Virus record (IMG/VR): IMGVR_UViG_3300010334_000023 | Span: 1-64,000 of that record | Direction: 5' to 3' (one strand) | DNA length: 64,000 nt | Shown: positions 1-30,759 of the stretch, piece after piece | Numbering within the stretch: position 1 is the stretch's first letter | Layout: each line of letters starts with the position of its first letter | Notes under the pieces: generated by a model | Databases searched by the model: none | Told to the model about the DNA's origin: nothing | What the model saw: the letters and a program-made list of their open reading frames with translations, nothing else | Translations under genes and position numbers: made by a program

Positions 1-232
1 CTCCAAAGTATGCCTTCATATCATTCGCCAAAACATCTTGTAATGCTTGGATAGCGATATCAGTCTGTCCTGCTGCTTGGATAGTAGGTTGAGTGACACA
101 TCTAGCACATTCCCGCACAATCAGCTCGGCAAACTTTTGTTGAATTCTTTCTCCATCTGGAATAGCATTTGGATACTGTTCCCAATCCAATTTACAAGCC
201 TGATCATGTAGTTCTTTAATTCGCTTGTTCAT
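1..232 (-). CDS. hypothetical phage protein, runs off the window start (MNKRIKELHDQA...QKFAELIVREC)
   Basis: Translated by hand from the ATG at 232, which overlaps the upstream stop; open to the window edge. Confidence 0.6.
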   Translation of the reverse strand, partial: MNKRIKELHDQACKLDWEQYPNAIPDGERIQQKFAELIVRECARCVTQPTIQAAGQTDIAIQALQDVLANDMKAYFG

Positions 233-474
233 CACTCTGCTTCCCTGATCTTCAGTCCGCATCTTGGACAAAACACGCCATGTTGCTTGTAGCTGCCATA
301 GTTACTGTGATCACAGGTCGTGGGAACCAGTCGTTGGCTGCGCTCTAACATGTCGACGATACCCTGGGCTGTGCGCAGGCTATGGTGGCTAGGTCCTCCC
401 ATGTACACGCTGGGATGATCCAGCATCCCAGCGATCTGTTGCACGATCAAGTCACGTTCTTCTGCCTGCATCAC
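232..474 (-). CDS. hypothetical protein with C-terminal CxH...H..CPRC metal-binding-like motif
   Basis: ORF track; overlaps the RNA ligase stop codon. Confidence 0.6.
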   Translation of the reverse strand: MMQAEERDLIVQQIAGMLDHPSVYMGGPSHHSLRTAQGIVDMLERSQRLVPTTCDHSNYGSYKQHGVFCPRCGLKIREAE

Positions 475-1730
475 AGGTCTCCGTCAAACTGATAGCTCCA
501 ACGAGCACCGTCCCAGAGATCGCGCACACTGTCGATCTTGGTCTGGCTGCCAGTGTTCTTCTTGATAGCTTCCAGCAACATGGTACGGCTGTCCTTGCCA
601 TCAAACTTGCCAAACACAAACTGAGGAGCAAAGGGATCGTTTTCCTTGATGGTTGGCATCCAGTTCAGAGCATAGGTCTTGCGATCCAATCCGCTGCCCT
701 GTACCATTCCCCAATAGGCATCATACTTGCGCACGTTGGCGGCCACTCCGATCCAGAAGTCCGTCTCAAACTCTTCAACACGCCGGCGATCGTCGTCCAG
801 CATGAAGGCCTTGATGTCGTCCAGCTTGTCGTTGACCAGCATGTCTACCACGTTCTTCTCGTGGGTCAGCATGTCCTTGGCCTTGTGTATGCGCACGTAC
901 CAGTCGCCCTTGACCTTGACCATGTGGCCGTCAGCAAAGCGCATGATCCAACCCTCGATGCCTTCAGCAGCGCGAGTCTTTGCGATCAGATGCTGCATGC
1001 TTTCAACAGTGCCAGGATAAGCACGCACCACGTCCAAGGCATTGCCCTCAGCTTGTGCACGCATGTCAGCATAGCTCATGTAGGTACCTTCTACCGTGCG
1101 GCGCACAGCGATCAGCACCAGTCGATCGATCACGTAGTCTATCACGATGCGCTGCTTGCGGCTGCACCACTCAAAGATTGGCGTCCAACCCTGATCCAGC
1201 ATGCGAGCTGCCCAGCGTGCTATGTCAGGGCGAGTGGCAATGAATTCCTCGGCCTGCATGCTGACCTCGGTTATGCCCATCTTGGTGCCCCAGCGCAGGC
1301 CAGCAGCAGTCACCACGGGAGTGATCATGCTGCCGTCCAGCTTTTCCAGGATCACGTGAGGCTTGCTGAGATCGATCAGGGTGTGCTGCGTCTCATCACG
1401 CTCGTTCACGTTGAAGAACTTGTGCAGCCGGCGCGCCATGATGGTGCCGTCTGGGTGGAACAGCAGGCCGCGGCATTCGCGGCGCACAGCAGCCAAGTTG
1501 ATGAAGGGTGGGCAACGCTGAGACCCACAGCCCAGAGCCTGATCATAGGGCAGCTTGCAGCCTGGGCACCACCATTGGTCATCGGCTACCTCAGGAAAGG
1601 TGTCAGACATGCTGACCATGTAGTTGACCACATAGCCCCAGTCGCGCTCTGCGATGATGAACTCGTCGCGGCCCTCGATGGCTGCGAGGACGTCGTCCAA
1701 GTGGCGTATCTCGGGGAATTCGTACTGCAT
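471..1730 (-). CDS. rnlA: T4 Rnl1-like RNA ligase
   Basis: ECRGL, KFFN, EKLDGS (motif I), FEW, EGWI, KVKGDWY motifs; upstream RBS and promoter. Confidence 0.9.
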   Translation of the reverse strand: MQYEFPEIRHLDDVLAAIEGRDEFIIAERDWGYVVNYMVSMSDTFPEVADDQWWCPGCKLPYDQALGCGSQRCPPFINLAAVRRECRGLLFHPDGTIMARRLHKFFNVNERDETQHTLIDLSKPHVILEKLDGSMITPVVTAAGLRWGTKMGITEVSMQAEEFIATRPDIARWAARMLDQGWTPIFEWCSRKQRIVIDYVIDRLVLIAVRRTVEGTYMSYADMRAQAEGNALDVVRAYPGTVESMQHLIAKTRAAEGIEGWIMRFADGHMVKVKGDWYVRIHKAKDMLTHEKNVVDMLVNDKLDDIKAFMLDDDRRRVEEFETDFWIGVAANVRKYDAYWGMVQGSGLDRKTYALNWMPTIKENDPFAPQFVFGKFDGKDSRTMLLEAIKKNTGSQTKIDSVRDLWDGARWSYQFDGDL

Positions 1731-1750
1731 GATCAGCTCCTGTTACTGCT

Positions 1751-1781
1751 TATACTAGCATGGATGCGCAGGCTGTCAACC
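1751..1781 (-). promoter_or_regulatory. sigma70-type early promoter (GGTTGACA...TGCTAGTAT)
   Basis: Motif recurs upstream of at least 8 minus-strand genes. Confidence 0.75.
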
Positions 1782-1795
1782 GATTTTGCAGGCAG

Positions 1796-2065
1796 CTATT
1801 GTGCGAGAATCTTGAGCACAGCTGGATGGATTTGTGCTACGACGCGCAGGGCATTGCTTTGATCTTGCAGCTGGTCGATGACGTACTGCAGCTGAGACAG
1901 GCTAGCATTGGTGCTGACCTCGCGCATGTAGGCTGCGTTAGCAGAGGTGATAGGCTGGTGGAAAGCAGCAAGCACGCGCACAGCAACTGGTTGGTTGAGA
2001 GTGGGCGTTTTGCGCACGAAGGCTTTGACATACAGAGTGGAGATGCGGGGTGCGGTGTGGCGCAT
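1796..2065 (-). CDS. hypothetical protein
   Basis: AAGGAG RBS and promoter upstream. Confidence 0.7.
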   Translation of the reverse strand: MRHTAPRISTLYVKAFVRKTPTLNQPVAVRVLAAFHQPITSANAAYMREVSTNASLSQLQYVIDQLQDQSNALRVVAQIHPAVLKILAQ

Positions 2066-2093
2066 GTGCTGGCTCCTTGCTGGCTGTTAAAAC

Positions 2094-2125
2094 GTACAAT
2101 AGCACGTATGTCCAAGATGTCAACC
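2094..2125 (-). promoter_or_regulatory. sigma70-type early promoter (GGTTGACA...GTGCTATTGT)
   Basis: Same repeated motif. Confidence 0.75.
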
Positions 2126-2794
2126 GAGATTATATGCCTGAGCAAGCTCTGCTAAATCTTTGATCTTGCTGTCTCTTTGGCAAAGATTTAAGTAGGTTTT
2201 GCGGTCTGTGCTCCACTCACTGCCCGTCCACCACTCAAATCCTGGCAGATGAGCCTTGTATGCGCTGCTCTGCTCGTAGCCGCTGCCTATGTACAGATGT
2301 GCCAAGCCCCGGGTCTTGGACAGGGCTATCTCATGATCGATCATGATCCTGCCCAGGTTGATGTCGCAGTCTGTGTAGGCGTTGTATTGCGCCTCCAACC
2401 CGCCGTGATAGGCATGCAGCTTGGTAAAGCCCACTGCTCCCCCCGCAGCATCACGGGCCACCAACCATATAGCAGCATGGTCCAGATGCCCAGGATCATA
2501 GTGGGCAGAAAAGCCCTTGCGTTCTAGGTAATCGCACCATATGGCCTTAAGCTCGTGTTTGTAATCCGTACCCAGTTCAAAGGAATATCCCGGTGTTGCC
2601 AAGGGCCAATCGTAAGCATCACAACACAGTCGAGTGCTGCGGCTCTGATACCATCTGCCTTGGTGCTGTAACCAACCCAGTGCCAGTGCTGTTGATTGCT
2701 CCTGTGCCTCACACTCCAGCTCGGCCCTGTAGCAGCAGAGATCAAGATGTTCCTGAGAACCGTGGTAGTGACTGTAGGTGACGCGCATGGACAC
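2120..2794 (-). CDS. arginyl/leucyl-tRNA-protein transferase-like (ATE1/Bpt family)
   Basis: LALGW..., LG...IDHEI, HLYIGSGYEQSSAYK resemble the Bpt/ATE C-terminal YLYLG...MxYK signature. Confidence 0.65.
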   Translation of the reverse strand: MSMRVTYSHYHGSQEHLDLCCYRAELECEAQEQSTALALGWLQHQGRWYQSRSTRLCCDAYDWPLATPGYSFELGTDYKHELKAIWCDYLERKGFSAHYDPGHLDHAAIWLVARDAAGGAVGFTKLHAYHGGLEAQYNAYTDCDINLGRIMIDHEIALSKTRGLAHLYIGSGYEQSSAYKAHLPGFEWWTGSEWSTDRKTYLNLCQRDSKIKDLAELAQAYNLG

Positions 2795-2800
2795 AGCATA

Positions 2801-3298
2801 ATGTTAGACCTCGATACAGCCAAGAAACATGTCAGCACATGGATAGATACCGTGCTTACAGAACCCCAAGCTGAGCTCAACGGTATCAGCAGATGTCCTT
2901 TCGCAGCCACAGCGCTGGCCAAGGATCGAGTGGCCTGGGCACTGGGCTCAGACGTAGCATCTGACGTTGAGGCTGCCATAAACACCTGGCAGGACCACTC
3001 GGATATTGCTGTGATAGTTTATGATCCCAGCATTGACCCAGCGGCGTTTGCCACAGCTGTGGAATCTGCGAACCATCACATCTGCAAAGCCAGAAGCTTC
3101 GTCGCACTGGAGGATCATCCGGCGGTACCAGAACACGTGGCAGGACTGAGCATGAACCAAGGTCAGTATGCGTTGGTACTGCTAATGCCAGCTGCCAAGC
3201 TGCATCGTGCAAGCCAGATGTTGCGAGCCAGAGGCTATTATGACAACTGGAGCACAGAGGACATGGACGCTGTGGTTAATTGGAGATGGACATGCTGA
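2801..3298 (+). CDS. DUF1415-like protein
   Basis: WI...LNGISRCPFA motif and DHP; likely start is the ATG at 2801. Confidence 0.55.
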   Translation: MLDLDTAKKHVSTWIDTVLTEPQAELNGISRCPFAATALAKDRVAWALGSDVASDVEAAINTWQDHSDIAVIVYDPSIDPAAFATAVESANHHICKARSFVALEDHPAVPEHVAGLSMNQGQYALVLLMPAAKLHRASQMLRARGYYDNWSTEDMDAVVNWRWTC

Positions 3299-4428
3299 GC
3301 TCGCATCAACCCTGGGACACCCTGCGTGCATGCGCAGTTGGCATCAGCTATCCACCCGAATGGTACAGCTACATCGCCAACAGCCGTGTGCGCAAGGTCA
3401 TGGAGCGCATTGCTGTCGAGACCGAGGAAGACTACCAAAAGCTGATAGCCAAGCTCAGAGAGTTCAACGTTGATGTGGTGCGTCCTGTGCTGCCTCACAG
3501 CATGGAAGAGAGATTCCTGTCCATGGGCAGATACGCCATACCGCCCATGGTCCCCAGAGATCACATGGCCATGATCGGCAATAGGTTCTTCGCAGGACGC
3601 CAGGCTCAGACCAAGACCTATCTGGGTGCGCCCAGCGACTACATGAACATAGTCAACTACGTGGCTGAGCGAGGTAATAACATAGTCTGGGACAATCGTA
3701 TCAATGGCGCCATGGTCACTCGCATAGGCAGCGATATCTACATTGGCACCAACAACAGGCATCAATTCAGGTATACATATCTCGAGACTTGGCATCTAGA
3801 TCGAGAACCAACTTGGCCTGAGAAAGCACCACACGAATGGCACGAGCTCACAGTTGGGCAGCAGGAACAGTTCGTACACAACTATACTCGCAGGATCACT
3901 GACCTGTTCTCAGACTATCGCACTCACATAGTTGACACGCAGGGCCACACAGACGGGTCGTTCTCTCCGGTCTGCCCCGGGCTGATCGTGAGCTTGGTAG
4001 ATGTGCAGAACTATGCAGAGACCTTTCCTGGTTGGGAAGTGATATATCTACCAGAACAGAGCTGGAATGCCATAACTGATTTCACCAAACTCAAGCGCAA
4101 GAACAACGGAAAATGGTGGGTGCCGGGCGAGGAGCTCAATGACGACTTCACAGAGTTCGTTGAACTTTGGTTGAACCAGTGGGTTGGCTACGTGGAAGAA
4201 ACAGTGTTTGACGTGAACATGCTGGTCATAGATCGCAAGAACGTGCTGTGTAACAACTACAACAAAGCAGTGTTTGATGCTCTAGAGCGTCACGGCATGA
4301 CTCCTCACATCATCAACTTCCGACATCGCTATTTCTGGGACGGTGGCCTACACTGCATAACCAGCGACCTCGATCGCATCGGCGAACGACAGGACTGGTT
4401 CCCTGAAAGGTCGCAGAAGGCTATGTAG
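3280..4428 (+). CDS. amidinotransferase (glycine/inosamine-phosphate amidinotransferase family)
   Basis: W..L...VG, ETEED, PRD, GHTDG, FDVN.L, GGLHCIT catalytic Cys motif. Confidence 0.85.
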   Translation: MEMDMLSSHQPWDTLRACAVGISYPPEWYSYIANSRVRKVMERIAVETEEDYQKLIAKLREFNVDVVRPVLPHSMEERFLSMGRYAIPPMVPRDHMAMIGNRFFAGRQAQTKTYLGAPSDYMNIVNYVAERGNNIVWDNRINGAMVTRIGSDIYIGTNNRHQFRYTYLETWHLDREPTWPEKAPHEWHELTVGQQEQFVHNYTRRITDLFSDYRTHIVDTQGHTDGSFSPVCPGLIVSLVDVQNYAETFPGWEVIYLPEQSWNAITDFTKLKRKNNGKWWVPGEELNDDFTEFVELWLNQWVGYVEETVFDVNMLVIDRKNVLCNNYNKAVFDALERHGMTPHIINFRHRYFWDGGLHCITSDLDRIGERQDWFPERSQKAM

Positions 4429-4438
4429 CAGATTGCTG

Positions 4439-4903
4439 CTAAACCAACAGCGGATTTGCCTTGAACTGTGCATAGATTTCCTCGTAGGTCTTATCAAATA
4501 TGGAAATCTTGAGCAGTATACGTTCTTCTGGCCCATTGGTCACGCTGTGGCGTCGTTGCGTGTTAAGCAATGCTGACCGGTATAGATAATCTATGCCTTC
4601 AATGGTGATTGGCGCAGCATTTTCACTGATTATGAAATTCACTGAGCATTCCGTGCCATTGTCAGTGTGCTCTTTCAGACTGGCAAATGGCTTTAACCAA
4701 TAGAATCTTGGCCTGGCATTGATTCCCAGATCTGCGATGATCTTTTCGATATACTCGCTGGTATGCTTTTTTATCAACCAATCAGGCGTGCCCAATCCGG
4801 GTCTCGGATCAACATACACAGATGCTGATGATTTAATCTCAGCCGCTTGCTGCAGTAGTATTTCCTTGTCTACTGTGTATTTCAGATGCAGAATTGGTTC
4901 CAT
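4439..4903 (-). CDS. 2OG-Fe(II) oxygenase / Asp-Asn beta-hydroxylase-like cupin
   Basis: HxD (EHTD)...LLNT..HSV.N..R pattern. Confidence 0.65.
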   Translation of the reverse strand: MEPILHLKYTVDKEILLQQAAEIKSSASVYVDPRPGLGTPDWLIKKHTSEYIEKIIADLGINARPRFYWLKPFASLKEHTDNGTECSVNFIISENAAPITIEGIDYLYRSALLNTQRRHSVTNGPEERILLKISIFDKTYEEIYAQFKANPLLV

Positions 4904-4959
4904 GGTATTGATCCTTAGACTCTAAGCAATGATCCTATAATATCATATACGCGATCATT

Positions 4960-5976
4960 TCACAAGAATTCATCCAGTAGATGATCCACATCTTCGTGCT
5001 TGACCAGATTCCGTTTGAACTGCTGCCAAGCTGCGGGCCAATTATAGCGAGCCTGTGCTATCTCAGCACAGACGTTGCGATCCAAGGTCAGCGCAGATTG
5101 TATCGCAGCGCCGATGTCTCGGTCCATGGCTCCAGTCTGGGGCAATATCACGTCTACGGGACCCTGCACTGGATAGGCTGCCACCGGTGTGCCCAGCACT
5201 TGGCTCTCTATCATCACCAATCCAAACGTGTCAGATTGGCTGGTGAACACCATGCAGTCAGCCTTGGAATATTCGTTGGCCAGATCCGCGCCGCGCAGCA
5301 TGCCTAGGAACTGCACACCTGGGTAGCGAGATCTCAGTGCTGGCAGATGTGGGCCATCGCCTACCATGACTAGTTCATAGACAGTGCTGTCCAGCTCACA
5401 GAAAGCTTCTAGGTTCTTTTCCTTGCTGATGCGTCCAACGCTGAGCAACCTTGGTTTGTCATTGAATGTGTGGCTAACGTAGGGCGTTAGGTTGCTGAGA
5501 TCCACACCTCTGCCAAACAGCACTACTTCGGCCTTGATGCTCTGTGCGATCAGCTCGGCTCTGATGCTGGGTGTTGGTACCATGACCTTACCATGCTGAT
5601 GGAACCAGCGCAGGAATCTCCAAGTCACTGTCTCTGGTATGTGGAACAGTCGGTTGAAATACTGTGCCCACTGCGTGTGATAGGCCGTGGTCAGCGCCAA
5701 GCGTCGAAAGCTGATGCGTGCCATCAGTCCCAGTGGACCTTCTGTGGCAATATGCAGGTGATCAGGTGCGAAACTGCGCACCATCTTGCGCACGCCCCAG
5801 GGCCAACACAGCTGCACCTCTGGATACCCAGGAGCTGGCCGATTTGGAAACAGTCCCGGATGTATGACCAAGACTTCCCAGCCATCAGCCTTGGCCTCGC
5901 GCACCAGATTGGTCAGCGTGGTCACCACGCCGTTGATCTGAGGTCGCCATGCGTCTGTGACTATGCAGAGCTTCAA
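4960..5976 (-). CDS. agt: GT4 glycosyltransferase, Agt-like diacylglycerol glycosyl/glucuronosyltransferase
   Basis: TDAW.PQ.NGVV.TL, HIATEGPLG, YHT, GRGVD, VGR.SKEKN, DTFGLVMIES motifs; next to plcP. Confidence 0.75.
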   Translation of the reverse strand: MKLCIVTDAWRPQINGVVTTLTNLVREAKADGWEVLVIHPGLFPNRPAPGYPEVQLCWPWGVRKMVRSFAPDHLHIATEGPLGLMARISFRRLALTTAYHTQWAQYFNRLFHIPETVTWRFLRWFHQHGKVMVPTPSIRAELIAQSIKAEVVLFGRGVDLSNLTPYVSHTFNDKPRLLSVGRISKEKNLEAFCELDSTVYELVMVGDGPHLPALRSRYPGVQFLGMLRGADLANEYSKADCMVFTSQSDTFGLVMIESQVLGTPVAAYPVQGPVDVILPQTGAMDRDIGAAIQSALTLDRNVCAEIAQARYNWPAAWQQFKRNLVKHEDVDHLLDEFL

Positions 5977-6146
5977 CGCAGCCTCTCGCAGCTGCCCGTG
6001 ATCTTGAATCGATCAAACTTCAGCTGATAGGTCATGCTGTTCAGTGCTGTCCTGCAGGCTTCTTCCGTGCGGAATTCCAAGCGTATGCGCCCTGGCACGT
6101 CACTGGGGTCACTCACGTGTATCGCCAACAGAACCAGGACCCACAT
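5973..6146 (-). CDS. 57-aa protein with hydrophobic N-terminus and two Cys (MWVLVLLAIHVSDP...)
   Basis: Translated by hand; fills the gap between plcP and agt, overlapping both. Confidence 0.6.
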   Translation of the reverse strand: MWVLVLLAIHVSDPSDVPGRIRLEFRTEEACRTALNSMTYQLKFDRFKITGSCERLR

Positions 6147-6879
6147 CCCGTTCTCCCCATCGCACTATCTCCCAGCGTCCATCCTCATGCTCAACCAATG
6201 CGGTGCAGCTTTCCACCCAGTCTCCGCAGTTCATGTAGGCAATACCATCCACGTCTCGGATGTTGGCATGATGTATGTGCCCACAGATGATGCCATCGCA
6301 GCCATGTGTGCGAGCGTAGCCGCTGAGATTCTCTTCGTAGTCCCCTATGAAGTTCACAGCCTGCTTGACCTTGTACTTGGCCCAAGCTGACAGGCTCCAA
6401 GGTCTCAGTCCCAGCATGCGCCTTGAGCCACTTACTACCACGTTGAGGCCTATGAGCGCATCATAGGCCCAGCTGCCAAGATGTGCTAGCCACTTGGCAT
6501 GCTTGATCACCACGTCGAACTGATCACCATGCATGACCTTGTAGCGCTTGCCATTGGCACCTCTGTACACGCAGGTATCAACCAAGCGTATGTTGCCAAA
6601 GTCGTGATCGCCAAAGCTGCGCAGGAACTCGTCGTGGTTGCCAGGCAGATATGTGACGTTAGTGCCCTTGCGTGCCTGCCTCAGTATCTTCTGTATGACG
6701 TCGTTGTGCACCTGCGGCCACATGAAGCTCTTGCTCATGGCCCATCCGTCAATGATGTCACCCACTAGAAACAGGTTGTCAGTCTCGAATGTCTTGAAGA
6801 AATCTAACAGCGCAGCAGCGTTGCTCATCTTGGTGCCCAGGTGAACGTCACTGATCCAGACGCTCCTGTACTCCATCAT
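6109..6879 (-). CDS. plcP: PlcP-type phospholipase C (LpxH-like metallophosphoesterase)
   Basis: ISDVHLG, GDIIDGW, W.Q.HNDVIQK.LR.ARKG, GNHDE, HGDQFD, WS.SAWAK..VK.AVNFI, CGHIH, GDWVESCTA. Confidence 0.8.
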   Translation of the reverse strand: MMEYRSVWISDVHLGTKMSNAAALLDFFKTFETDNLFLVGDIIDGWAMSKSFMWPQVHNDVIQKILRQARKGTNVTYLPGNHDEFLRSFGDHDFGNIRLVDTCVYRGANGKRYKVMHGDQFDVVIKHAKWLAHLGSWAYDALIGLNVVVSGSRRMLGLRPWSLSAWAKYKVKQAVNFIGDYEENLSGYARTHGCDGIICGHIHHANIRDVDGIAYMNCGDWVESCTALVEHEDGRWEIVRWGERDVGPGSVGDTRE

Positions 6880-7904
6880 AGGTTAAACAGAGCCTTCACT
6901 GTGTCTAAGCCGTTCAACACTTTCTGTCGATCTGCTTCAGCACGGGCCTTGGCTTCTGCGGTCTCGGCCTTGTCACGCTTCTTGGCATTGACGTCTGTCA
7001 TGGCTTTCTGTTCGTAGCGATCCACGAACTTGGCCAAGAAGTCATGCGCATCTGCAAACCCAGCCAGGTCTTTCTTGCCGTACATGTGGTTAAGCTCAAA
7101 GCTGCGTGCCAAGCCTTTCACTGCGTTGACCAGCTTGGCGATCTTGACGTCACTGGGATCGTTGCCACGGAAACGGTTCAGCAAGGTATCCAGCTTGGCA
7201 GTGCTGGGCTCTCGTCCAGTGATCTGCTCATACTCGTTGACAAAGATGTCGTAGATAAAACTTTCTGGATCAGTGCTGATGGTCTTGATCACCGTGTTCT
7301 TCTGCTTGCTGAACGGCACATGCACATCATCCACGGTCTTGAGCTGCACGCCCGCATGCTGTATGCTCATATCCAACAGCTCGCCCAGCACGCTGAACAT
7401 GTTACCAGTGAGCAGGCCTTTGACCCCGCGCTCTGGTGTCACTCTGGCAGCACCCCAGGCCCTTAGCTGAGGTGGGTGCCACATGAAGTCCACCTGCACG
7501 TACTGATCGGGTCCTATCTGGAATATGGGATGGCCTGGCTTGCTCTCGCCCGTGTGTATGTAATCCGGCTGAGTGCTTTTCACGAACTGATCAGCCAGCT
7601 GGTTCCAGTGGTTGGTGTATTGACCGTAGCTGGCACCCATCACATCTGGCGCTATCATCTGCAGATCGATGTCACCGTAGATCTTGTCTGGATGCTCTTT
7701 GCTATCTATCTCATGATAGGTGCCAGATCCAGTGGGCCGACCCAGCTCTACCTGACCTTGATTCATAGCACTGAGCCAGCGATTGAAGTCTCGCACAAAC
7801 TGCTGCACCTTGGCCAGCGTGATCTTGACAGTGGCTGGTTTGATCACCGTGCCCTGTGTTACTGTGGTGTCCCAGCCACCTTCGAGGAGTTCTGTTATGC
7901 GCAT
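6876..7904 (-). CDS. putative pol-beta-type nucleotidyltransferase
   Basis: TGSG...YGDIDL and VQVD motifs; TAAATA upstream; MRITELLE N-terminus. Confidence 0.55.
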   Translation of the reverse strand: MRITELLEGGWDTTVTQGTVIKPATVKITLAKVQQFVRDFNRWLSAMNQGQVELGRPTGSGTYHEIDSKEHPDKIYGDIDLQMIAPDVMGASYGQYTNHWNQLADQFVKSTQPDYIHTGESKPGHPIFQIGPDQYVQVDFMWHPPQLRAWGAARVTPERGVKGLLTGNMFSVLGELLDMSIQHAGVQLKTVDDVHVPFSKQKNTVIKTISTDPESFIYDIFVNEYEQITGREPSTAKLDTLLNRFRGNDPSDVKIAKLVNAVKGLARSFELNHMYGKKDLAGFADAHDFLAKFVDRYEQKAMTDVNAKKRDKAETAEAKARAEADRQKVLNGLDTVKALFNL

Positions 7905-7911
7905 GAGCTAT

Positions 7912-8256
7912 TTACACACTGCCCCACTTGAGCAGATCAAACATCGTGGTGTATTCCCAGTGATCAAAGGATGGCGCAAACTCACGGCCCGGCCCAGCAT
8001 GATGGTCTATCACGCGCCTTCGCAGTATGCGCTTCAGCCACACGATCTTGCCCAGCTTGATCGGACAGTCTGTGCTGAACGGTGCTTGATCATGCCAATA
8101 CAACATCTGCACTGGTCGCCACGCAAACCATGATTCCCATCGCTGGCGTTCTGGCCTGATATAGAATCTATGACCGTAGAGGTTATCTAAATCGTAGCGA
8201 CTGTAGCAACTTGTCATGCAGCAGCATAGTGCAGACATGGCTAGGGCAGCAATCAA
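7912..8256 (-). CDS. hypothetical protein (true start probably downstream of the hairpin)
   Basis: ORF with W..WFAWRPV motif. Confidence 0.55.
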   Translation of the reverse strand: MIAALAMSALCCCMTSCYSRYDLDNLYGHRFYIRPERQRWESWFAWRPVQMLYWHDQAPFSTDCPIKLGKIVWLKRILRRRVIDHHAGPGREFAPSFDHWEYTTMFDLLKWGSV

Positions 8257-8273
8257 TCTGGTTGCTGCCCTAG
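8241..8273. terminator. 12-bp hairpin, probable terminator
   Basis: CTAGGGCAGCAA / TTGCTGCCCTAG inverted repeat just after the 8292 stop. Confidence 0.65.
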
Positions 8274-8291
8274 AATGTTATTAGCCTGCGA

Positions 8292-8633
8292 TTAGATCGC
8301 TTCGCGCATGCCCGCACGCTCTTCCATCTTTTGGATGCGTTCGGAAGTCTTGATCATGGTCTCGAGGTTCTTGGCGCGGATGGCAGCAATGTCCTTGACC
8401 TCAGCCACGGTCTCTGCCTGCGCTACAGCCTTGCCCTCTGCTTTGACAGCTGCCTTGCCTTCGATGAAAGCCAGCGCAGCTTCCTTGGACATGGCCTGCG
8501 GCAGCGCCTGCAGCTGGATGTCCGTATGTCCATTGCGTGCGAGGACCTTGACGCGATCCATAGAAGTAGCAAAGCGAGCCTTGGTCTCGCCGTTGAGAGT
8601 GCTGTAACCAGCGACCGTGAAAAGCTTTTCCAT
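8292..8633 (-). CDS. hypothetical early protein (MEKLFTVAGYS...K.RFA...VKVL..NGHTDI.L..LP..MSK)
   Basis: CAGGAG RBS, own promoter and terminator. Confidence 0.8.
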   Translation of the reverse strand: MEKLFTVAGYSTLNGETKARFATSMDRVKVLARNGHTDIQLQALPQAMSKEAALAFIEGKAAVKAEGKAVAQAETVAEVKDIAAIRAKNLETMIKTSERIQKMEERAGMREAI

Positions 8634-8680
8634 GTGTAACTCCTGTGTGTGTTGCGTTGTGTGTGTTTGCTTCAACATGT

Positions 8681-8712
8681 GTACAATAGCACGGTTATAC
8701 AGCACGTCAACC
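8681..8712 (-). promoter_or_regulatory. sigma70-type early promoter (GGTTGACG...GTGCTATTGT)
   Basis: Repeated motif. Confidence 0.75.
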
Positions 8713-8772
8713 ACTTTTTTCCAGTTTTTTCACCAAAGATCTCAGTAATTTAGCCCTAGCTGAACTGCGTTC

Positions 8773-9258
8773 TCAGCCCTTTTTAGCCACAGGGACGTGG
8801 TAGATCTCGTCGAAATCCTCGCCGGGACCCGGGGGTTCCAAGCTGGCGATCATGCTGGTCATGACCCCAGCAGGGATGGTCTTGCCCGCCCGGCCAGCCA
8901 AGCGCCGCTCCAATTCTGCCCCGTCCGGGGTAGGAAAGAACAACGCGATGCGCTCATAGCTCTTGGGCACCTGTCCCAGCTTGCCTCGGCGGGTCTTGGC
9001 CGTGAGGTTGGTCTGGTCCCAGATGATGTCTCGCCGGTCGCGCACGGCCTGCTTCACGGTTTCGCGCAGTGCTGCTGTAGCAGCCTTGATCTCAGTCTCA
9101 AAGACTTCGTTATAGGTCAGGCCCTGCGCAGCTGCCGCAGCTTCTATGTAGTCATCTGTGCTGGCTATCACAGCCTCATGGCTGTGCTCGCGTATCCATG
9201 TGCTCTTGCCCGAGCCAGGAACGCCTATGAGCATGAACAACTTTGGCATGTCATTCAC
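8773..9258 (-). CDS. AAA_33-type P-loop kinase (polynucleotide 5'-kinase-like)
   Basis: GVPGSGKST, STDD, IIWDQTNL, R...R, K.IP. Confidence 0.8.
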   Translation of the reverse strand: MNDMPKLFMLIGVPGSGKSTWIREHSHEAVIASTDDYIEAAAAAQGLTYNEVFETEIKAATAALRETVKQAVRDRRDIIWDQTNLTAKTRRGKLGQVPKSYERIALFFPTPDGAELERRLAGRAGKTIPAGVMTSMIASLEPPGPGEDFDEIYHVPVAKKG

Positions 9259-29429: not shown

Positions 29430-30203
29430 ATGAACAGAAGAATAAACGAGCATCTGGTGAAAAATCTCAAGGCCACGTTCAATTTAGAGCGCTGGCGCGA
29501 GATAAACGAGCAAATCAGCAGAGAAACGCTGCTGGAGAGACTGCCATGGACCAGCAAGCGCAGAGAGAAGTTCACTCAGATGCTAGCCAGCACCTTTGGT
29601 GTCGCTGCTGAGCTGCGCGGCACGGTGGCAGAACTGACCAACAGCCTGGATCAAGCCTACTGTGAGCATTTCTGGCAGAAAGTTTGGCAGCCGCGTACCG
29701 AGAATTACACCTATACTGGTTGGCAGGCAGTTGATGAGATACTGAGCAGGAATCCAAGGTCAGTGTTGGACGTTGGCTGCGGTTATAACCAGTTCAAGAC
29801 CAAGATACCAAACCTAGTCGGCATAGACAAGTACAACCCTGCTGCTGACTACATGGTCGACATCTTGGACTTTGATGTCGACCCTGAAAGCTATGATGCT
29901 GTCATGGTATTTGGTAGCATAAACTTTGGCGACTATGAGGATGTGGCCTGTAGGTTTGCCAAGGTCTTTGAGCTCACTGCGCCTGGTGGCAGGATATATG
30001 TACGAGCCAATCCCGGCTACAGCCACCCCACTGGCCCATGGATAGACATATTTGCCTGGGACTTTGCCACAGCTCATCGCGTGGCCAAGGACAACAATGC
30101 CACTATGTTGACGTTCAAGCATGACCAAGATCAGCCACAGGATAGCAGCGTTGATCCGGGTCACGGCCAAGGTAATCGTCTTTATTTTGTCTATGAGAAG
30201 TGA
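29430..30203 (+). CDS. class I SAM-dependent methyltransferase with N-terminal helical (ACP-like?) domain
   Basis: VLDVGCG, GID, YDAV..FGSINFG, PGGRI. Confidence 0.8.
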   Translation: MNRRINEHLVKNLKATFNLERWREINEQISRETLLERLPWTSKRREKFTQMLASTFGVAAELRGTVAELTNSLDQAYCEHFWQKVWQPRTENYTYTGWQAVDEILSRNPRSVLDVGCGYNQFKTKIPNLVGIDKYNPAADYMVDILDFDVDPESYDAVMVFGSINFGDYEDVACRFAKVFELTAPGGRIYVRANPGYSHPTGPWIDIFAWDFATAHRVAKDNNATMLTFKHDQDQPQDSSVDPGHGQGNRLYFVYEK

Positions 30204-30204
30204 G

Positions 30205-30535
30205 TGATGGGTTTATTCTGTTTCCAAGGAAACCCATCGAAAACTCATTGAGGTTACGCCGCTAGGCGAATCTCAGATGCAACGAAGTTGTCGTTTGCAG
30301 TTAGAAAATTGGACAATCCGGTTACCCGGAGGCGTGCCTAACCTGCTGACTCCTGCTACCCTTTACACGTCTGTCGATCCTATTTCGCCCCCATCAAAGA
30401 TACACACCTAAAGCTAGAATGCCTCATAGGGTCACGAAGCAACTAGGGACTTCAACCCTCGCATGTATCTATGGTGGAGGCGCCGGGTACCGCCCCCGGG
30501 TCCAGACCGCTTATTACGATGCTATCAACATCAAC
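30205..30535 (-). ncRNA. ssrA: circularly permuted two-piece tmRNA, tag ANDNFVASEIRLAA
   Basis: Acceptor piece ends GACCCGGGGGCGGTACCCGGCGCCTCCACCA (3' end at 30472); intervening segment about 80 nt; coding piece starts GGGGGCGAAATAGGATCGAC at 30392; tag ORF 30298-30254; terminal hairpin 30206-30238. Confidence 0.93.
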
Positions 30536-30759
30536 TAGGTATTTATAGCAGGTTTTTTGTACAAGTCAACCCTGGCCCACTCGCAGCTGCACTTAACATC
30601 GCAGAATCCCAGATTGCGCTGGGCGTTGTGGTACAGTGGTGCCCAATAGCTCCACTGCCGGTCACCACCCTGGAACTGGTGCAGTATGGCTTCGGTTGGC
30701 TTACCGCAATGGCTGCAGGGCTGTCCCTGGATCCAGGTCATAGTTGGAGTTGGCTGCAT
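30535..30759 (-). CDS. small Cys-rich protein (CxxC...FC...C)
   Basis: ORF in operon. Confidence 0.6.
   Translation of the reverse strand: MQPTPTMTWIQGQPCSHCGKPTEAILHQFQGGDRQWSYWAPLYHNAQRNLGFCDVKCSCEWARVDLYKKPAINT
30540..30547 (-). promoter_or_regulatory. T4-type late promoter TATAAATA driving the tmRNA
   Basis: Exact TATAAATA directly upstream of the acceptor piece. Confidence 0.7.

What the first reader, a model, noticed from the sequence alone, without database searches (positions are those of the whole stretch)
2120..2794. Phage aminoacyl-tRNA-protein transferase: N-degron tagging alongside tmRNA C-degron tagging
Seen: an ATE1/Bpt-like C-terminal signature (HLYIGSGY...AYK). Known: Bpt/ATE enzymes add Leu or Arg to acidic N-termini and create N-degrons for ClpS/ClpAP. 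Inference: together with the phage tmRNA (ClpXP-type LAA tag), the phage may steer host proteolysis from both protein ends. It may instead act as a tRNA-dependent peptide-bond enzyme for the neighbouring cluster.
Basis: partly seen in the sequence, partly recalled or inferred. Interest (0 to 1): 0.65.

Follow-up and report, generated by a model that had tools for sequence, protein, structure and literature searches.

The report
Phage arginyltransferase-like enzyme with fixed partners
A giant lake phage carries a stripped-down relative of the enzymes that move an amino acid from a charged tRNA onto a protein end; it has lost the residue that reads acidic protein ends and always sits beside a small partner gene, which points to arginine-conjugate chemistry rather than plain degradation tagging.

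Summary
The ORF is real: 2120-2788 on the minus strand, 222 aa from the ATG. It is a true but very divergent homologue of bacterial Bpt and eukaryotic ATE1. Profile against profile gives 97.4% probability over 204 columns. ATE1 is the best structural match over the whole length. The catalytic Tyr-Lys pair and the Glu that binds the arginine side chain in ATE1 are invariant. The Cys4 metal site is absent. The Arg that reads acidic N-termini is Leu in 63 of 68 relatives. The family was found only in uncultured phages: 360 IMG/VR contigs and none of 50,697 GenBank phage records. In nearly all of the 87 loci first examined the gene abuts one of two unrelated ~165-aa partner genes. In the window the partner has the fold of AglA and an invariant Cys-Pro motif. 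AglA is a heme-thiolate hydroxylase that acts on an arginine conjugate made with Arg-tRNA. The next gene is an arginine-type amidinotransferase. My best reading is a tRNA-dependent, probably arginyl, transferase feeding a guanidine-tailoring step on a non-canonical acceptor. The N-degron idea is not excluded but lacks support. The tmRNA is a trait of the phage lineage, not a partner. I rate this a new variant of a known kind.

The parts
2120..2788 (-). Bpt/ATE1-like aminoacyl-tRNA transferase gene, 222 aa from the ATG. An in-frame GTG at 2794 would add two residues.
   Evidence: ORF and translation. Family of at least 274 proteins. hhalign to Bpt 97.4%. ATE1 is the best fold match over the full length. 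Invariant E155, Y179 and K180.
2801..3298 (+). Partner type A, 165 aa. It is divergent head-to-head with the transferase, with start codons 12 nt apart. It has an AglA-like (YqcI/YcgG) fold, is a distant DUF1415/DUF6875 relative, and carries invariant Cys32-Pro33.
   Evidence: Adjacent to the transferase gene in 25 of 87 loci, plus L088, L089, L194 and L195. Model pLDDT 89.6. The only real PDB match is AglA 9ub3, Z 8.4 with 151 residues aligned; the next is Z 4.3. Atlas DUF1415/DUF6875 models give TM 0.8. hhalign to DUF1415 is 77%, E 2e-5, sharing the W...CPFA and HP motifs. PHROG 28122/10325.
3280..4428 (+). Amidinotransferase-family gene, 382 aa. It overlaps the end of partner A by 19 nt.
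   Evidence: phmmer against PDB hits SxtG, L-arginine:glycine amidinotransferase, StrB1 and HsvA at E 2e-6 to 1e-4. The aligned blocks hold the His and Cys motifs. It lies next to the pair in 12 of the 25 type-A loci and in L089 and L090, and in none of the 60 type-B loci.
471..1730 (-). T4 Rnl1-type RNA ligase, downstream on the same strand. It is linked only in the megaphage clade and its membership of the module is uncertain.
   Evidence: Pfam RNA_lig_T4_1 at 1e-26 and T4_Rnl1_C. Found within 0.4-2.7 kb of the transferase in 10 loci.

Best explanation
The gene encodes a compact, phage-specific offshoot of the Bpt/ATE1 family.

Shown:
- It is homologous to Bpt over its full length and has an ATE1-like fold.
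- It keeps the Tyr-Lys pair without which ATE1 is inactive.
- It keeps, invariantly, the Glu that binds the arginine side chain of Arg-tRNA in ATE1. Leu-transferring Bpt has Gln there.
- It lacks the Cys4 metal site and the Arg that recognises N-terminal Asp/Glu.
- It is locked next to one of two unrelated small partner genes across deep divergence.

Inferred:
- It takes a basic amino acid, most likely arginine, from host aminoacyl-tRNA and joins it to the amino group of a non-canonical acceptor. The acceptor is not an acidic protein N-terminus. It could be a small amine or a particular peptide end.
- In the window's lineage the product is then tailored on its guanidine group. The neighbouring AglA-fold Cys-Pro protein, a putative thiolate-heme N-hydroxylase, would do this, with the adjacent amidinotransferase supplying or moving amidino groups.
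- This is the logic of argolaphos biosynthesis. There AglC uses Arg-tRNA to make an arginyl conjugate and AglA hydroxylates its guanidine.
- In most other phages a His/Glu-rich metal-binding-looking partner (type B) takes the place of the heme-type partner.
For: - Homology: hhalign A1 against Bpt gives 97.4%, E 1.3e-11, 204 columns. ATE_C hits 27 of 68 relatives. Remote relatives score above the ATE_C cut-off. Atlas neighbours are viral ATE_C clusters.
- Fold: ATE1 is first over residues 1-224. Other aa-tRNA transferases follow (FemX, MprF/aaPGS, Sbb17), ahead of plain GNATs that cover only the C-terminal ~130 residues.
- Residues: Y179 and K180 are 68/68 and equal klAte1 Y303/K304; the Y303F and K304A mutants are inactive. 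E155 is 68/68 and equals klAte1 Glu277, where E277A/K abolishes or nearly abolishes activity and Bpt has Gln. S135 is 61/68 and equals Ser255.
- Gene pairing: 85 of 87 loci have a partner within 0-83 nt. One of the other two ends at the gene. The other has a diverged tandem type-B-like neighbour.
- Partner type follows the transferase tree.
- Partner A matches AglA at Z 8.4, well above background. It has an invariant Cys in a Cys-Pro motif after helix 1, as AglA's heme ligand Cys44 lies after helix 1.
- AMPn-Arg, the AglA substrate, is made by AglC with ArgRS and tRNA. The argolaphos cluster holds GNAT-type tRNA-dependent ligases next to the YqcI/YcgG gene.
- The third gene is an amidinotransferase.
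- Contigs from two lake metatranscriptome libraries cover all three genes at 99-100% identity. This is compatible with expression.
Against: - No activity was measured. The donor amino acid rests on one conserved Glu plus context.
- The other pocket positions (M/T/I/L at 151, L/F at 167) look more like Bpt than ATE1.
- Partner A has no sequence-level match to the YqcI/YcgG family (hhalign 0.2%; no Pfam hit). Heme binding is therefore inferred from fold and one Cys.
- No ferredoxin, reductase or ArgRS was found in the 216-kb record, which is only about 42% complete.
- 60 of 87 loci use partner type B. Its fold and chemistry are unknown, so the guanidine-tailoring story may hold only for the type-A clade.
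- The complex prediction gave no verdict.
- The acceptor is unknown and could still be a protein N-terminus.
Confidence: 0.45

Rival explanations
1. Canonical N-degron enzyme. It adds Leu or Arg to N-terminal Asp/Glu of host or phage proteins and so sends them to ClpS/ClpAP, complementing tmRNA tagging.
For: It is homologous to Bpt/ATE1 over the full length, with the catalytic Tyr-Lys intact. All 8 large phage records with the gene also carry an alpha-type tmRNA. The probable hosts are Alphaproteobacteria, some of which have ClpS and Bpt: the Caulobacter control scores for both families.
Against: The Arg that reads the acidic side chain (klAte1 Arg80, Bpt Arg52 of GFRRSG) is Leu in 63/68. The equivalent of Tyr25 and the Cys4 site are deleted. 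tmRNA also occurs in 2 of 3 complete related megaphages that lack the gene. No ClpS is in the record. This reading does not explain the obligatory partner gene or the amidinotransferase.
Confidence: 0.12
2. Site-specific aminoacylation of one particular protein, phage or host, as a regulatory or anti-defence mark. The partner would act as a specificity factor, a processing hydrolase (type B) or an oxidase (type A), not as a small-molecule enzyme.
For: All characterised Bpt/ATE1 enzymes act on proteins. The self-contained two-gene module sits among early or nucleotide-metabolism genes in T4-like contigs, not in biosynthetic clusters. Type B shows faint zincin-like (ImmA/IrrE, SprT) structural neighbours, which would fit a protease that exposes a new N-terminus.
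Against: The zincin resemblance is below any threshold (TM 0.39-0.45) and the motif is HExxE, not HExxH. The AglA-fold protein and amidinotransferases are known as small-molecule enzymes. No interaction between transferase and partner was supported.
Confidence: 0.25
3. A plain GNAT acyl-CoA acetyltransferase that only resembles ATE_C.
For: The C-terminal ~130 residues superpose on many acetyltransferases at Z 9-10. A few relatives hit Pfam Acetyltransf_6.
Against: ATE1 ranks first and is matched over the whole protein, including the N-terminal part that plain GNATs lack. The profile match to Bpt spans 204 columns. The ATE1/FemX catalytic Lys and the ATE1 Tyr are invariant. According, PF13480-type GNATs of the argolaphos cluster (AlpF, AlpO) serve as aminoacyl-tRNA-dependent ligases.
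Confidence: 0.05
4. A tRNA-directed function. It would bind, hydrolyse or divert a charged tRNA to tune translation or counter tRNA-targeting defence, linked to the nearby Rnl1 ligase.
For: A T4 Rnl1-type ligase lies 0.4-2.7 kb away in 10 loci of the megaphage clade. The family keeps tRNA-side residues such as K93 (K/R 68/68), aligned to Bpt Arg119.
Against: Rnl1 is absent from the other 77 loci. The conserved acceptor-side surface (G40, W41, Y49, R52, R55) and the fixed partner argue for a real acceptor substrate.
Confidence: 0.06

Closest known systems
Bacterial Bpt (leucyl/arginyl-tRNA-protein transferase, Pfam ATE_N + ATE_C)
   Same: Same size class (222 against ~240 aa). Full-length profile homology (97.4%). 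Shared invariant positions include G-aromatic (G40 W41), Y49, R55, Y168, G170, Y179-K180, E187 and W194.
   Different: The four invariant Cys of Bpt are absent, including an 8-residue deletion. The RR of GFRRSG is replaced by Leu-x. Glu replaces Gln at the donor-side pocket. It has a strongly conserved C-terminal block (GFEWWTGSEWS...LC.RDS) with an invariant Cys205. It was found only in phage contigs and is always paired with a partner gene.
Eukaryotic ATE1 arginyltransferase (PDB 7TIF, 7WG1, 8E3S, 8TZV)
   Same: Best structural match over the whole chain. Tyr303/Lys304 and the Arg-binding Glu277 are conserved, and Ser255 is conserved in most members.
   Different: Less than half the length. 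No zinc finger or Fe-S cysteines. Arg80 and Tyr25 of the acidic-N-terminus pocket are missing. Tyr289 is replaced by Leu/Phe.
AglC + AglA of argolaphos biosynthesis (Streptomyces monomycini)
   Same: An aminoacyl-tRNA-dependent GNAT-fold ligase is encoded with a YqcI/YcgG-fold Cys-ligated heme enzyme that hydroxylates the guanidine of the arginyl product. The window pairs an ATE-like transferase with an AglA-fold Cys-Pro protein.
   Different: AglC/AlpF are PF13480-type GNATs of ~340 aa, not Bpt-like. Partner A is 165 aa against 274 aa and has no sequence match to YqcI/YcgG. No phosphonate genes are present. The setting is a phage.
FemX / MprF (aaPGS) / Sbb17 and other aa-tRNA-dependent GNAT transferases
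   Same: They are the next-best fold matches (Z 11-12). The catalytic Lys is equivalent to FemX Lys305.
   Different: Those are tandem-GNAT or membrane-linked enzymes acting on peptidoglycan precursors, lipids or antibiotics. Only the C-terminal GNAT half superposes.

Membership tests
Bpt/ATE1 (aminoacyl-tRNA-protein transferases, Pfam ATE_N PF04376 + ATE_C PF04377) | Sequence homology to the family over the catalytic domain | tested here: met
   hhalign of the 68-member alignment against 13 Bpt proteins gives 97.4%, E 1.3e-11, 204 columns. ATE_C hits 27/68 relatives. The window protein alone gets no Pfam hit and NCBIfam arginyltransferase E 0.008.
Bpt/ATE1 | ATE1-like two-lobed fold: GNAT core plus the N-terminal lobe | tested here: met
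   Foldseek top 30 hits are all ATE1, E 1e-6 to 3e-5. VIA gives Z 13.0 and 12.6 with 206-213 of 224 residues aligned.
Bpt/ATE1 | Catalytic Tyr-Lys (klAte1 Tyr303/Lys304; the mutants are inactive) | tested here: met
   Y179 and K180 are invariant in 68/68 and aligned to ATE1 and Bpt.
Bpt/ATE1 | N-terminal cysteine cluster (Zn or Fe-S site; klAte1 Cys23/26/95/96; Bpt invariant C19/C63/C66/C69) | tested here: not met
   No conserved Cys in the N-terminal 200 residues; the only invariant Cys is C205. The Cys-bearing segment is deleted in the alignment. No ATE_N hit in any of 68 members.
Bpt/ATE1 | Basic pocket that reads N-terminal Asp/Glu (klAte1 Arg80 = first R of GFRRSG) | tested here: not met
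   The aligned position is Leu in 63/68 (the others are A, G, S, I). The next position is hydrophobic. The role of Arg80 is from PMC9351520.
Bpt/ATE1 | Aminoacyl-tRNA-dependent transfer to a protein N-terminus | not testable with these tools
   Needs an enzyme assay.
ATE1-type (arginine donor) versus Bpt-type (leucine donor) pocket | Acidic residue at the klAte1 Glu277 position (Gln in Bpt) | tested here: met
   E155 is 68/68. The neighbouring E134 is 67/68. Ser is found at the Ser255 position in 61/68. Positions 151 and 167 are hydrophobic, as in Bpt.
YqcI/YcgG heme-thiolate hydroxylases (for partner A) | Sandwich fold with the axial Cys after helix 1 | tested here: inconclusive
   AglA is the single outlying fold match: Z 8.4, 151/165 aligned, next hit Z 4.3. 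The invariant Cys32-Pro33 follows helix 1, as Cys44 does in AglA. There is no sequence-level match. The nearer kin are DUF1415/DUF6875, of unknown function.
Amidinotransferases (for the 382-aa gene) | Homology including the catalytic His and Cys blocks | tested here: met
   PDB hits are SxtG, AGAT, StrB1 and HsvA, E 2e-6 to 1e-4. The aligned HxD and GG-H-C-T-D blocks are present. No Pfam or NCBIfam hit.

The most novel reading that the evidence does not exclude
T4-like phages of Alphaproteobacteria carry a portable two-gene cassette. It uses host Arg-tRNA to build an arginyl conjugate on a non-protein or non-acidic acceptor, then tailors the guanidine. Two non-homologous tailoring enzymes do this interchangeably: a minimal thiolate-heme protein, or a His/Glu metal protein that is sometimes fused to a nucleotidyltransferase. 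This would be a phage-made arginine-derived metabolite or a new kind of terminal protein mark, produced by ribosome-independent use of tRNA during infection.
Probability: 0.3. Interest if true: 0.8.

Novelty: new variant of a known kind. Interest (0 to 1): 0.62.

Why it matters
Aminoacyl-tRNA transferases of the Bpt/ATE1 type have been described in cells, where they feed N-degron pathways. My paper searches for arginyltransferases in phages found no report of one.

Here the family turns out to have a large branch found only in phages. It is in 360 IMG/VR contigs, in phages from about 100 kb to at least 340 kb, and recurs in lakes and the ocean. This branch has shed the features that define N-degron specificity and has acquired obligatory partner genes.

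If the arginine-conjugate reading is right, these phages divert charged tRNA into secondary chemistry during infection. The partner A family (DUF1415/DUF6875-like) would then be a minimal member of the newly recognised thiolate-heme AglA fold.

Even if the acceptor proves to be a protein, the loss of the acidic-end reader means a new substrate rule for this enzyme family. The invariant gene pairing gives a direct handle for finding it.

Tried and rejected
- Pfam on the window protein alone gave no hit. phmmer against PDB gave only chance-level TEN1 matches.
- tblastn of three diverse family members, and of partner B, against 50,697 GenBank phage records gave no match. megablast of the first 8 kb gave no match.
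- Partner A against partner B by profile comparison: not homologous, 0.6%.
- Profiles of partner A and of partner B against PDB sequences gave nothing significant. Partner B has only weak DtxR-type metal-site similarity, E 0.4.
- Complex prediction of transferase plus partner A plus heme: no verdict (median score 0.00). This is not evidence either way.
- The 342-aa gene at 6876-7904 compared with the nucleotidyltransferase domain fused to some type-B partners: no similarity.
- ClpS, ArgRS, 2Fe-2S ferredoxin and tRNA genes were not found in the 216-kb record, which is only about 42% complete.
- The promoter/terminator scan of 1-9000 was not clearly above shuffled expectation and gave nothing for the 12-nt divergent gap.
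- The paper search for DUF1415 gave nothing useful.
- One gammaproteobacterial genome in the Bpt sample (G040, locus L107) is unpublished.

Full report
**The observation**

The window holds an open frame on the minus strand from 2794 (GTG) or 2788 (ATG) to 2120. The database copy and all relatives begin at the ATG, giving 222 aa. It is the core of the most conserved block of the family.

The protein alone gets no Pfam hit. In NCBIfam it gets only a weak match to the arginyltransferase model, E 0.008. A reader working from sequence alone did well to spot it.

**Is it really ATE/Bpt-like?**

Yes. The evidence is as follows.
- A word-indexed search found 274 relatives of 220-260 aa, nearly all unnamed metagenome proteins. 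A few carry ATE_C or are called arginyltransferase by JGI.
- An exhaustive HMMER scan of 1.8 billion cluster representatives found 155 (collected).
- In an alignment of 68 relatives (A1), 27 members hit Pfam ATE_C, best E 3.8e-7. More remote relatives pass the ATE_C cut-off.
- The A1 profile's five best PDB sequence hits are all ATE1.
- I fetched 13 gammaproteobacterial Bpt genes. Profile against profile gave 97.4% probability, E 1.3e-11, over 204 columns, which is nearly the whole protein.
- The AlphaFold model is confident, pLDDT 95.7. Its best matches are yeast, K. lactis and human ATE1 (Foldseek E about 1e-6; VIA Z 13.0 and 12.6 with 206-213 of 224 residues aligned).
- Other aminoacyl-tRNA transferases come next (FemX, MprF/aaPGS, Sbb17). 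Ordinary acetyltransferases match only the C-terminal GNAT half.
- The protein-language-model neighbours are viral clusters in which half the members carry ATE_C.

**What is kept and what is lost**

I used the alignments, the column counts and the mutational work on K. lactis Ate1 (PMC9351520).

Kept:
- Y179-K180 (68/68) correspond to Tyr303-Lys304. The Y303F and K304A mutants of klAte1 are inactive. The Lys also corresponds to the catalytic Lys305 of FemX.
- E155 (68/68) corresponds to Glu277, the only charged residue of the pocket that holds the arginine of Arg-tRNA. E277K has no detectable activity and E277A very little. Leu-transferring Bpt has Gln here.
- Ser at the Ser255 position is present in 61/68. 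An extra near-invariant Glu (E134) sits beside it.
- Y49 corresponds to Tyr87, and R55 to the invariant Bpt Arg73.

Lost:
- All four invariant Bpt cysteines are gone. These form the Zn or Fe-S site of the N-terminal lobe, and part of that segment is deleted.
- The Tyr25 equivalent is gone.
- The first Arg of GFRRSG (klAte1 Arg80) is gone. That residue reads the acidic N-terminal side chain. It is Leu in 63 of 68 members.

So the catalytic machinery and a donor pocket suited to a basic amino acid are intact. The acceptor pocket that defines N-degron specificity is not.

**Where the family lives**

- A pattern scan of IMG/VR found 360 viral contigs encoding a relative.
- Three diverse members found nothing in 50,697 GenBank phage records.
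- A scan of one genome for each of 185,579 prokaryote species found only four short MAG contigs plus one spurious 21-residue match.
- Context is T4-like wherever it can be seen: T4 portal, baseplate, prohead protease, RNR, ThyX, PhoH, RNase H.
- The window's own record is a 216-kb IMG/VR fragment that CheckV rates 42% complete. It carries a T4 portal and gp23.
- Its portal is 83% identical to that of a complete 518-kb genome with terminal repeats. It is also related to complete 453- and 480-kb genomes. It therefore belongs to a T4-like megaphage lineage.
- The stretch recurs in freshwater and lake metagenomes from many studies.
- Contigs assembled from two lake metatranscriptome libraries cover the transferase, partner A, the amidinotransferase and Rnl1 at 99-100% identity. 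This is compatible with expression but does not prove it, because DNA can be present in such libraries.

**The decisive clue: a fixed neighbour**

I examined 87 loci: 80 from IMG/VR, six from assemblies and L001, the window's own locus.
- In 25 loci the transferase gene abuts a ~165-aa gene of "type A", which is the window's 2801-3298. It lies head-to-head with start codons 12-14 nt apart, or tail-to-tail with overlap.
- In 60 loci it abuts an unrelated ~160-aa gene of "type B", directly downstream on the same strand with a 0-83 nt gap.
- Of the remaining two, one locus ends at the gene. The other has a diverged tandem type-B-like gene upstream.
- Further loci found later follow the same rule.
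- The two partner families are not homologous (hhalign 0.6%).
- On a maximum-likelihood tree of the transferases rooted with Bpt, partner type follows the tree. The type-A group forms one moderately supported clade nested among type-B lineages.
- The pairing has thus survived divergence down to about 33% identity.
- The cassette is accessory. Three complete megaphages related by portal lack it.

**What the partners are**

Partner A:
- It has no named Pfam domain. It belongs to PHROG 28122/10325, both of unknown function. Members weakly hit DUF6875 and DUF1415. hhalign to seven bacterial DUF1415 proteins gives 77%, E 2e-5, with shared W...CPFA and H-P motifs.
- Its model (pLDDT 89.6) has a single outlying match in 48,161 PDB representatives. 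That match is AglA of Streptomyces monomycini: Z 8.4, 151 of 165 residues aligned, with the next hit at Z 4.3.
- AglA is the first solved YqcI/YcgG enzyme. It has a new heme "sandwich" fold with Cys44 as axial ligand, and it hydroxylates the guanidine nitrogen of aminomethylphosphonate-linked arginine (PMC12866846).
- That substrate is made by AglC using ArgRS and tRNA. The argolaphos cluster encodes GNAT-type tRNA-dependent ligases beside the YqcI/YcgG gene (PMC8976061).
- Partner A has an invariant Cys32-Pro33 directly after its first helix. AglA's Cys44 occupies the same topological place.
- There is no sequence-level match to YqcI/YcgG. Heme binding is therefore an inference.

The third gene, 3280-4428:
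- It overlaps the end of partner A and is an amidinotransferase. PDB hits are SxtG, arginine:glycine amidinotransferase, StrB1 and HsvA at E 2e-6 to 1e-4, including the His and Cys blocks.
- It accompanies the pair in 12 of the 25 type-A loci, in two distinct clades, and in none of the type-B loci.

Partner B:
- It has invariant DRH, HExxEK, AH and E motifs.
- It shows faint, sub-threshold resemblance to zincin-like peptidases and to the DtxR metal site.
- In about a third of distinct sequences it is fused to a nucleotidyltransferase-like domain.
- Its function is open.

**Most likely mechanism**

Shown: a Bpt/ATE1 homologue with intact catalytic residues, an ATE1-type acidic donor pocket and no acidic-N-terminus reader, locked to a partner gene.

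Inferred:
- It draws a basic amino acid, most probably arginine, from host aminoacyl-tRNA. The record has no tRNA or ArgRS genes.
- It acylates an amine that is not an Asp/Glu N-terminus.
- In the window's clade the AglA-fold protein then oxidises the guanidine, and the amidinotransferase supplies or moves amidino groups. This is the AglC/AglA logic transplanted into a phage.
- The acceptor is unknown. It may be a small amine or a specific peptide end.

I put 0.45 on this whole chain. I put about 0.85 on "aminoacyl-tRNA-dependent transferase" and about 0.5 on arginine as donor.

**The tmRNA link**

The two-piece alpha-type tmRNA at 30163-30573 is real. All eight large records that carry the transferase also carry one. 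So do two of the three complete related megaphages that lack the transferase. The two genes lie 27 kb apart here. This looks like a shared trait of phages of Alphaproteobacteria rather than a functional pair. No ClpS is encoded. The complex prediction for transferase plus partner A gave no verdict and is not used as evidence.

**Verdict**

The family call is right. This is a new, phage-restricted variant of a known enzyme kind with an unexplained, invariant partnership. It is directly testable by expression and tRNA-dependent transfer assays.

Noticed in passing
window 30163-30573 (-): Two-piece (permuted) alpha-type tmRNA with tag ANDNFVASEIRLAA. The same RNA family is present above threshold in 7 other large related phage records, and in 2 of 3 complete megaphages that lack the transferase. 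It points to alphaproteobacterial hosts.
   Followed up: partly
window 471-1730 (-): T4 Rnl1-type RNA ligase, with best phage relatives in Synechococcus, Ruegeria, Sinorhizobium and Caulobacter phages (33-40% identity). It keeps a position 0.4-2.7 kb from the transferase in the megaphage clade only.
   Followed up: partly
G000:C1:109796-116888 (outside the window); L143, L159, L176: The record carries a T4 portal and gp23 and is about 42% complete. Portal relatives include complete genomes of 518,643, 452,799 and 480,347 bp (two with terminal repeats). This is a freshwater T4-like megaphage lineage.
   Followed up: partly
L002 3322-10635; also L016: In 338-343-kb relatives the transferase pair sits in a biosynthesis-like block. 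A B12-binding radical SAM methyltransferase (KedN5-family hit, 3.8e-73) lies directly downstream. A second radical SAM enzyme, a GGACT/AIG2-like cyclotransferase and a PNP_UDP-like gene lie upstream.
   Followed up: no
L022, L027, L030, L034, L038, L047, L052, L076 (partner B genes of 402-415 aa): Partner type B occurs fused to a C-terminal ~240-aa domain with a nucleotidyltransferase-like GGN...SDIDVH motif (weak Pfam NTP_transf_2 hits).
   Followed up: partly
L050 7251-9128: Here the transferase has a divergent upstream 261-aa gene that looks like a tandem duplication of the type-B motif. A RimI-like GNAT acetyltransferase-looking ORF lies directly downstream.
   Followed up: no
window 4439-7904 (-): A run of minus-strand genes lies beside the module: a 154-aa unknown, a GT4 glycosyltransferase, a calcineurin-like metallophosphoesterase and a 342-aa unknown. 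The metallophosphoesterase has 52-93% identical copies 3-8 kb from the transferase in 10 other loci of both partner types.
   Followed up: partly
L195 (G070:C1:90939-91340): A 230-kb related record holds only a 151-aa truncated or divergent transferase homologue (E 3e-16) next to a type-A partner. It may be a decaying copy.
   Followed up: no
window 2788-2801: The start codons of the transferase and partner A are divergent and only 12 nt apart. The same 12-14 nt head-to-head spacing is kept in 11 other loci, so each promoter must lie inside the other gene or further away.
   Followed up: partly
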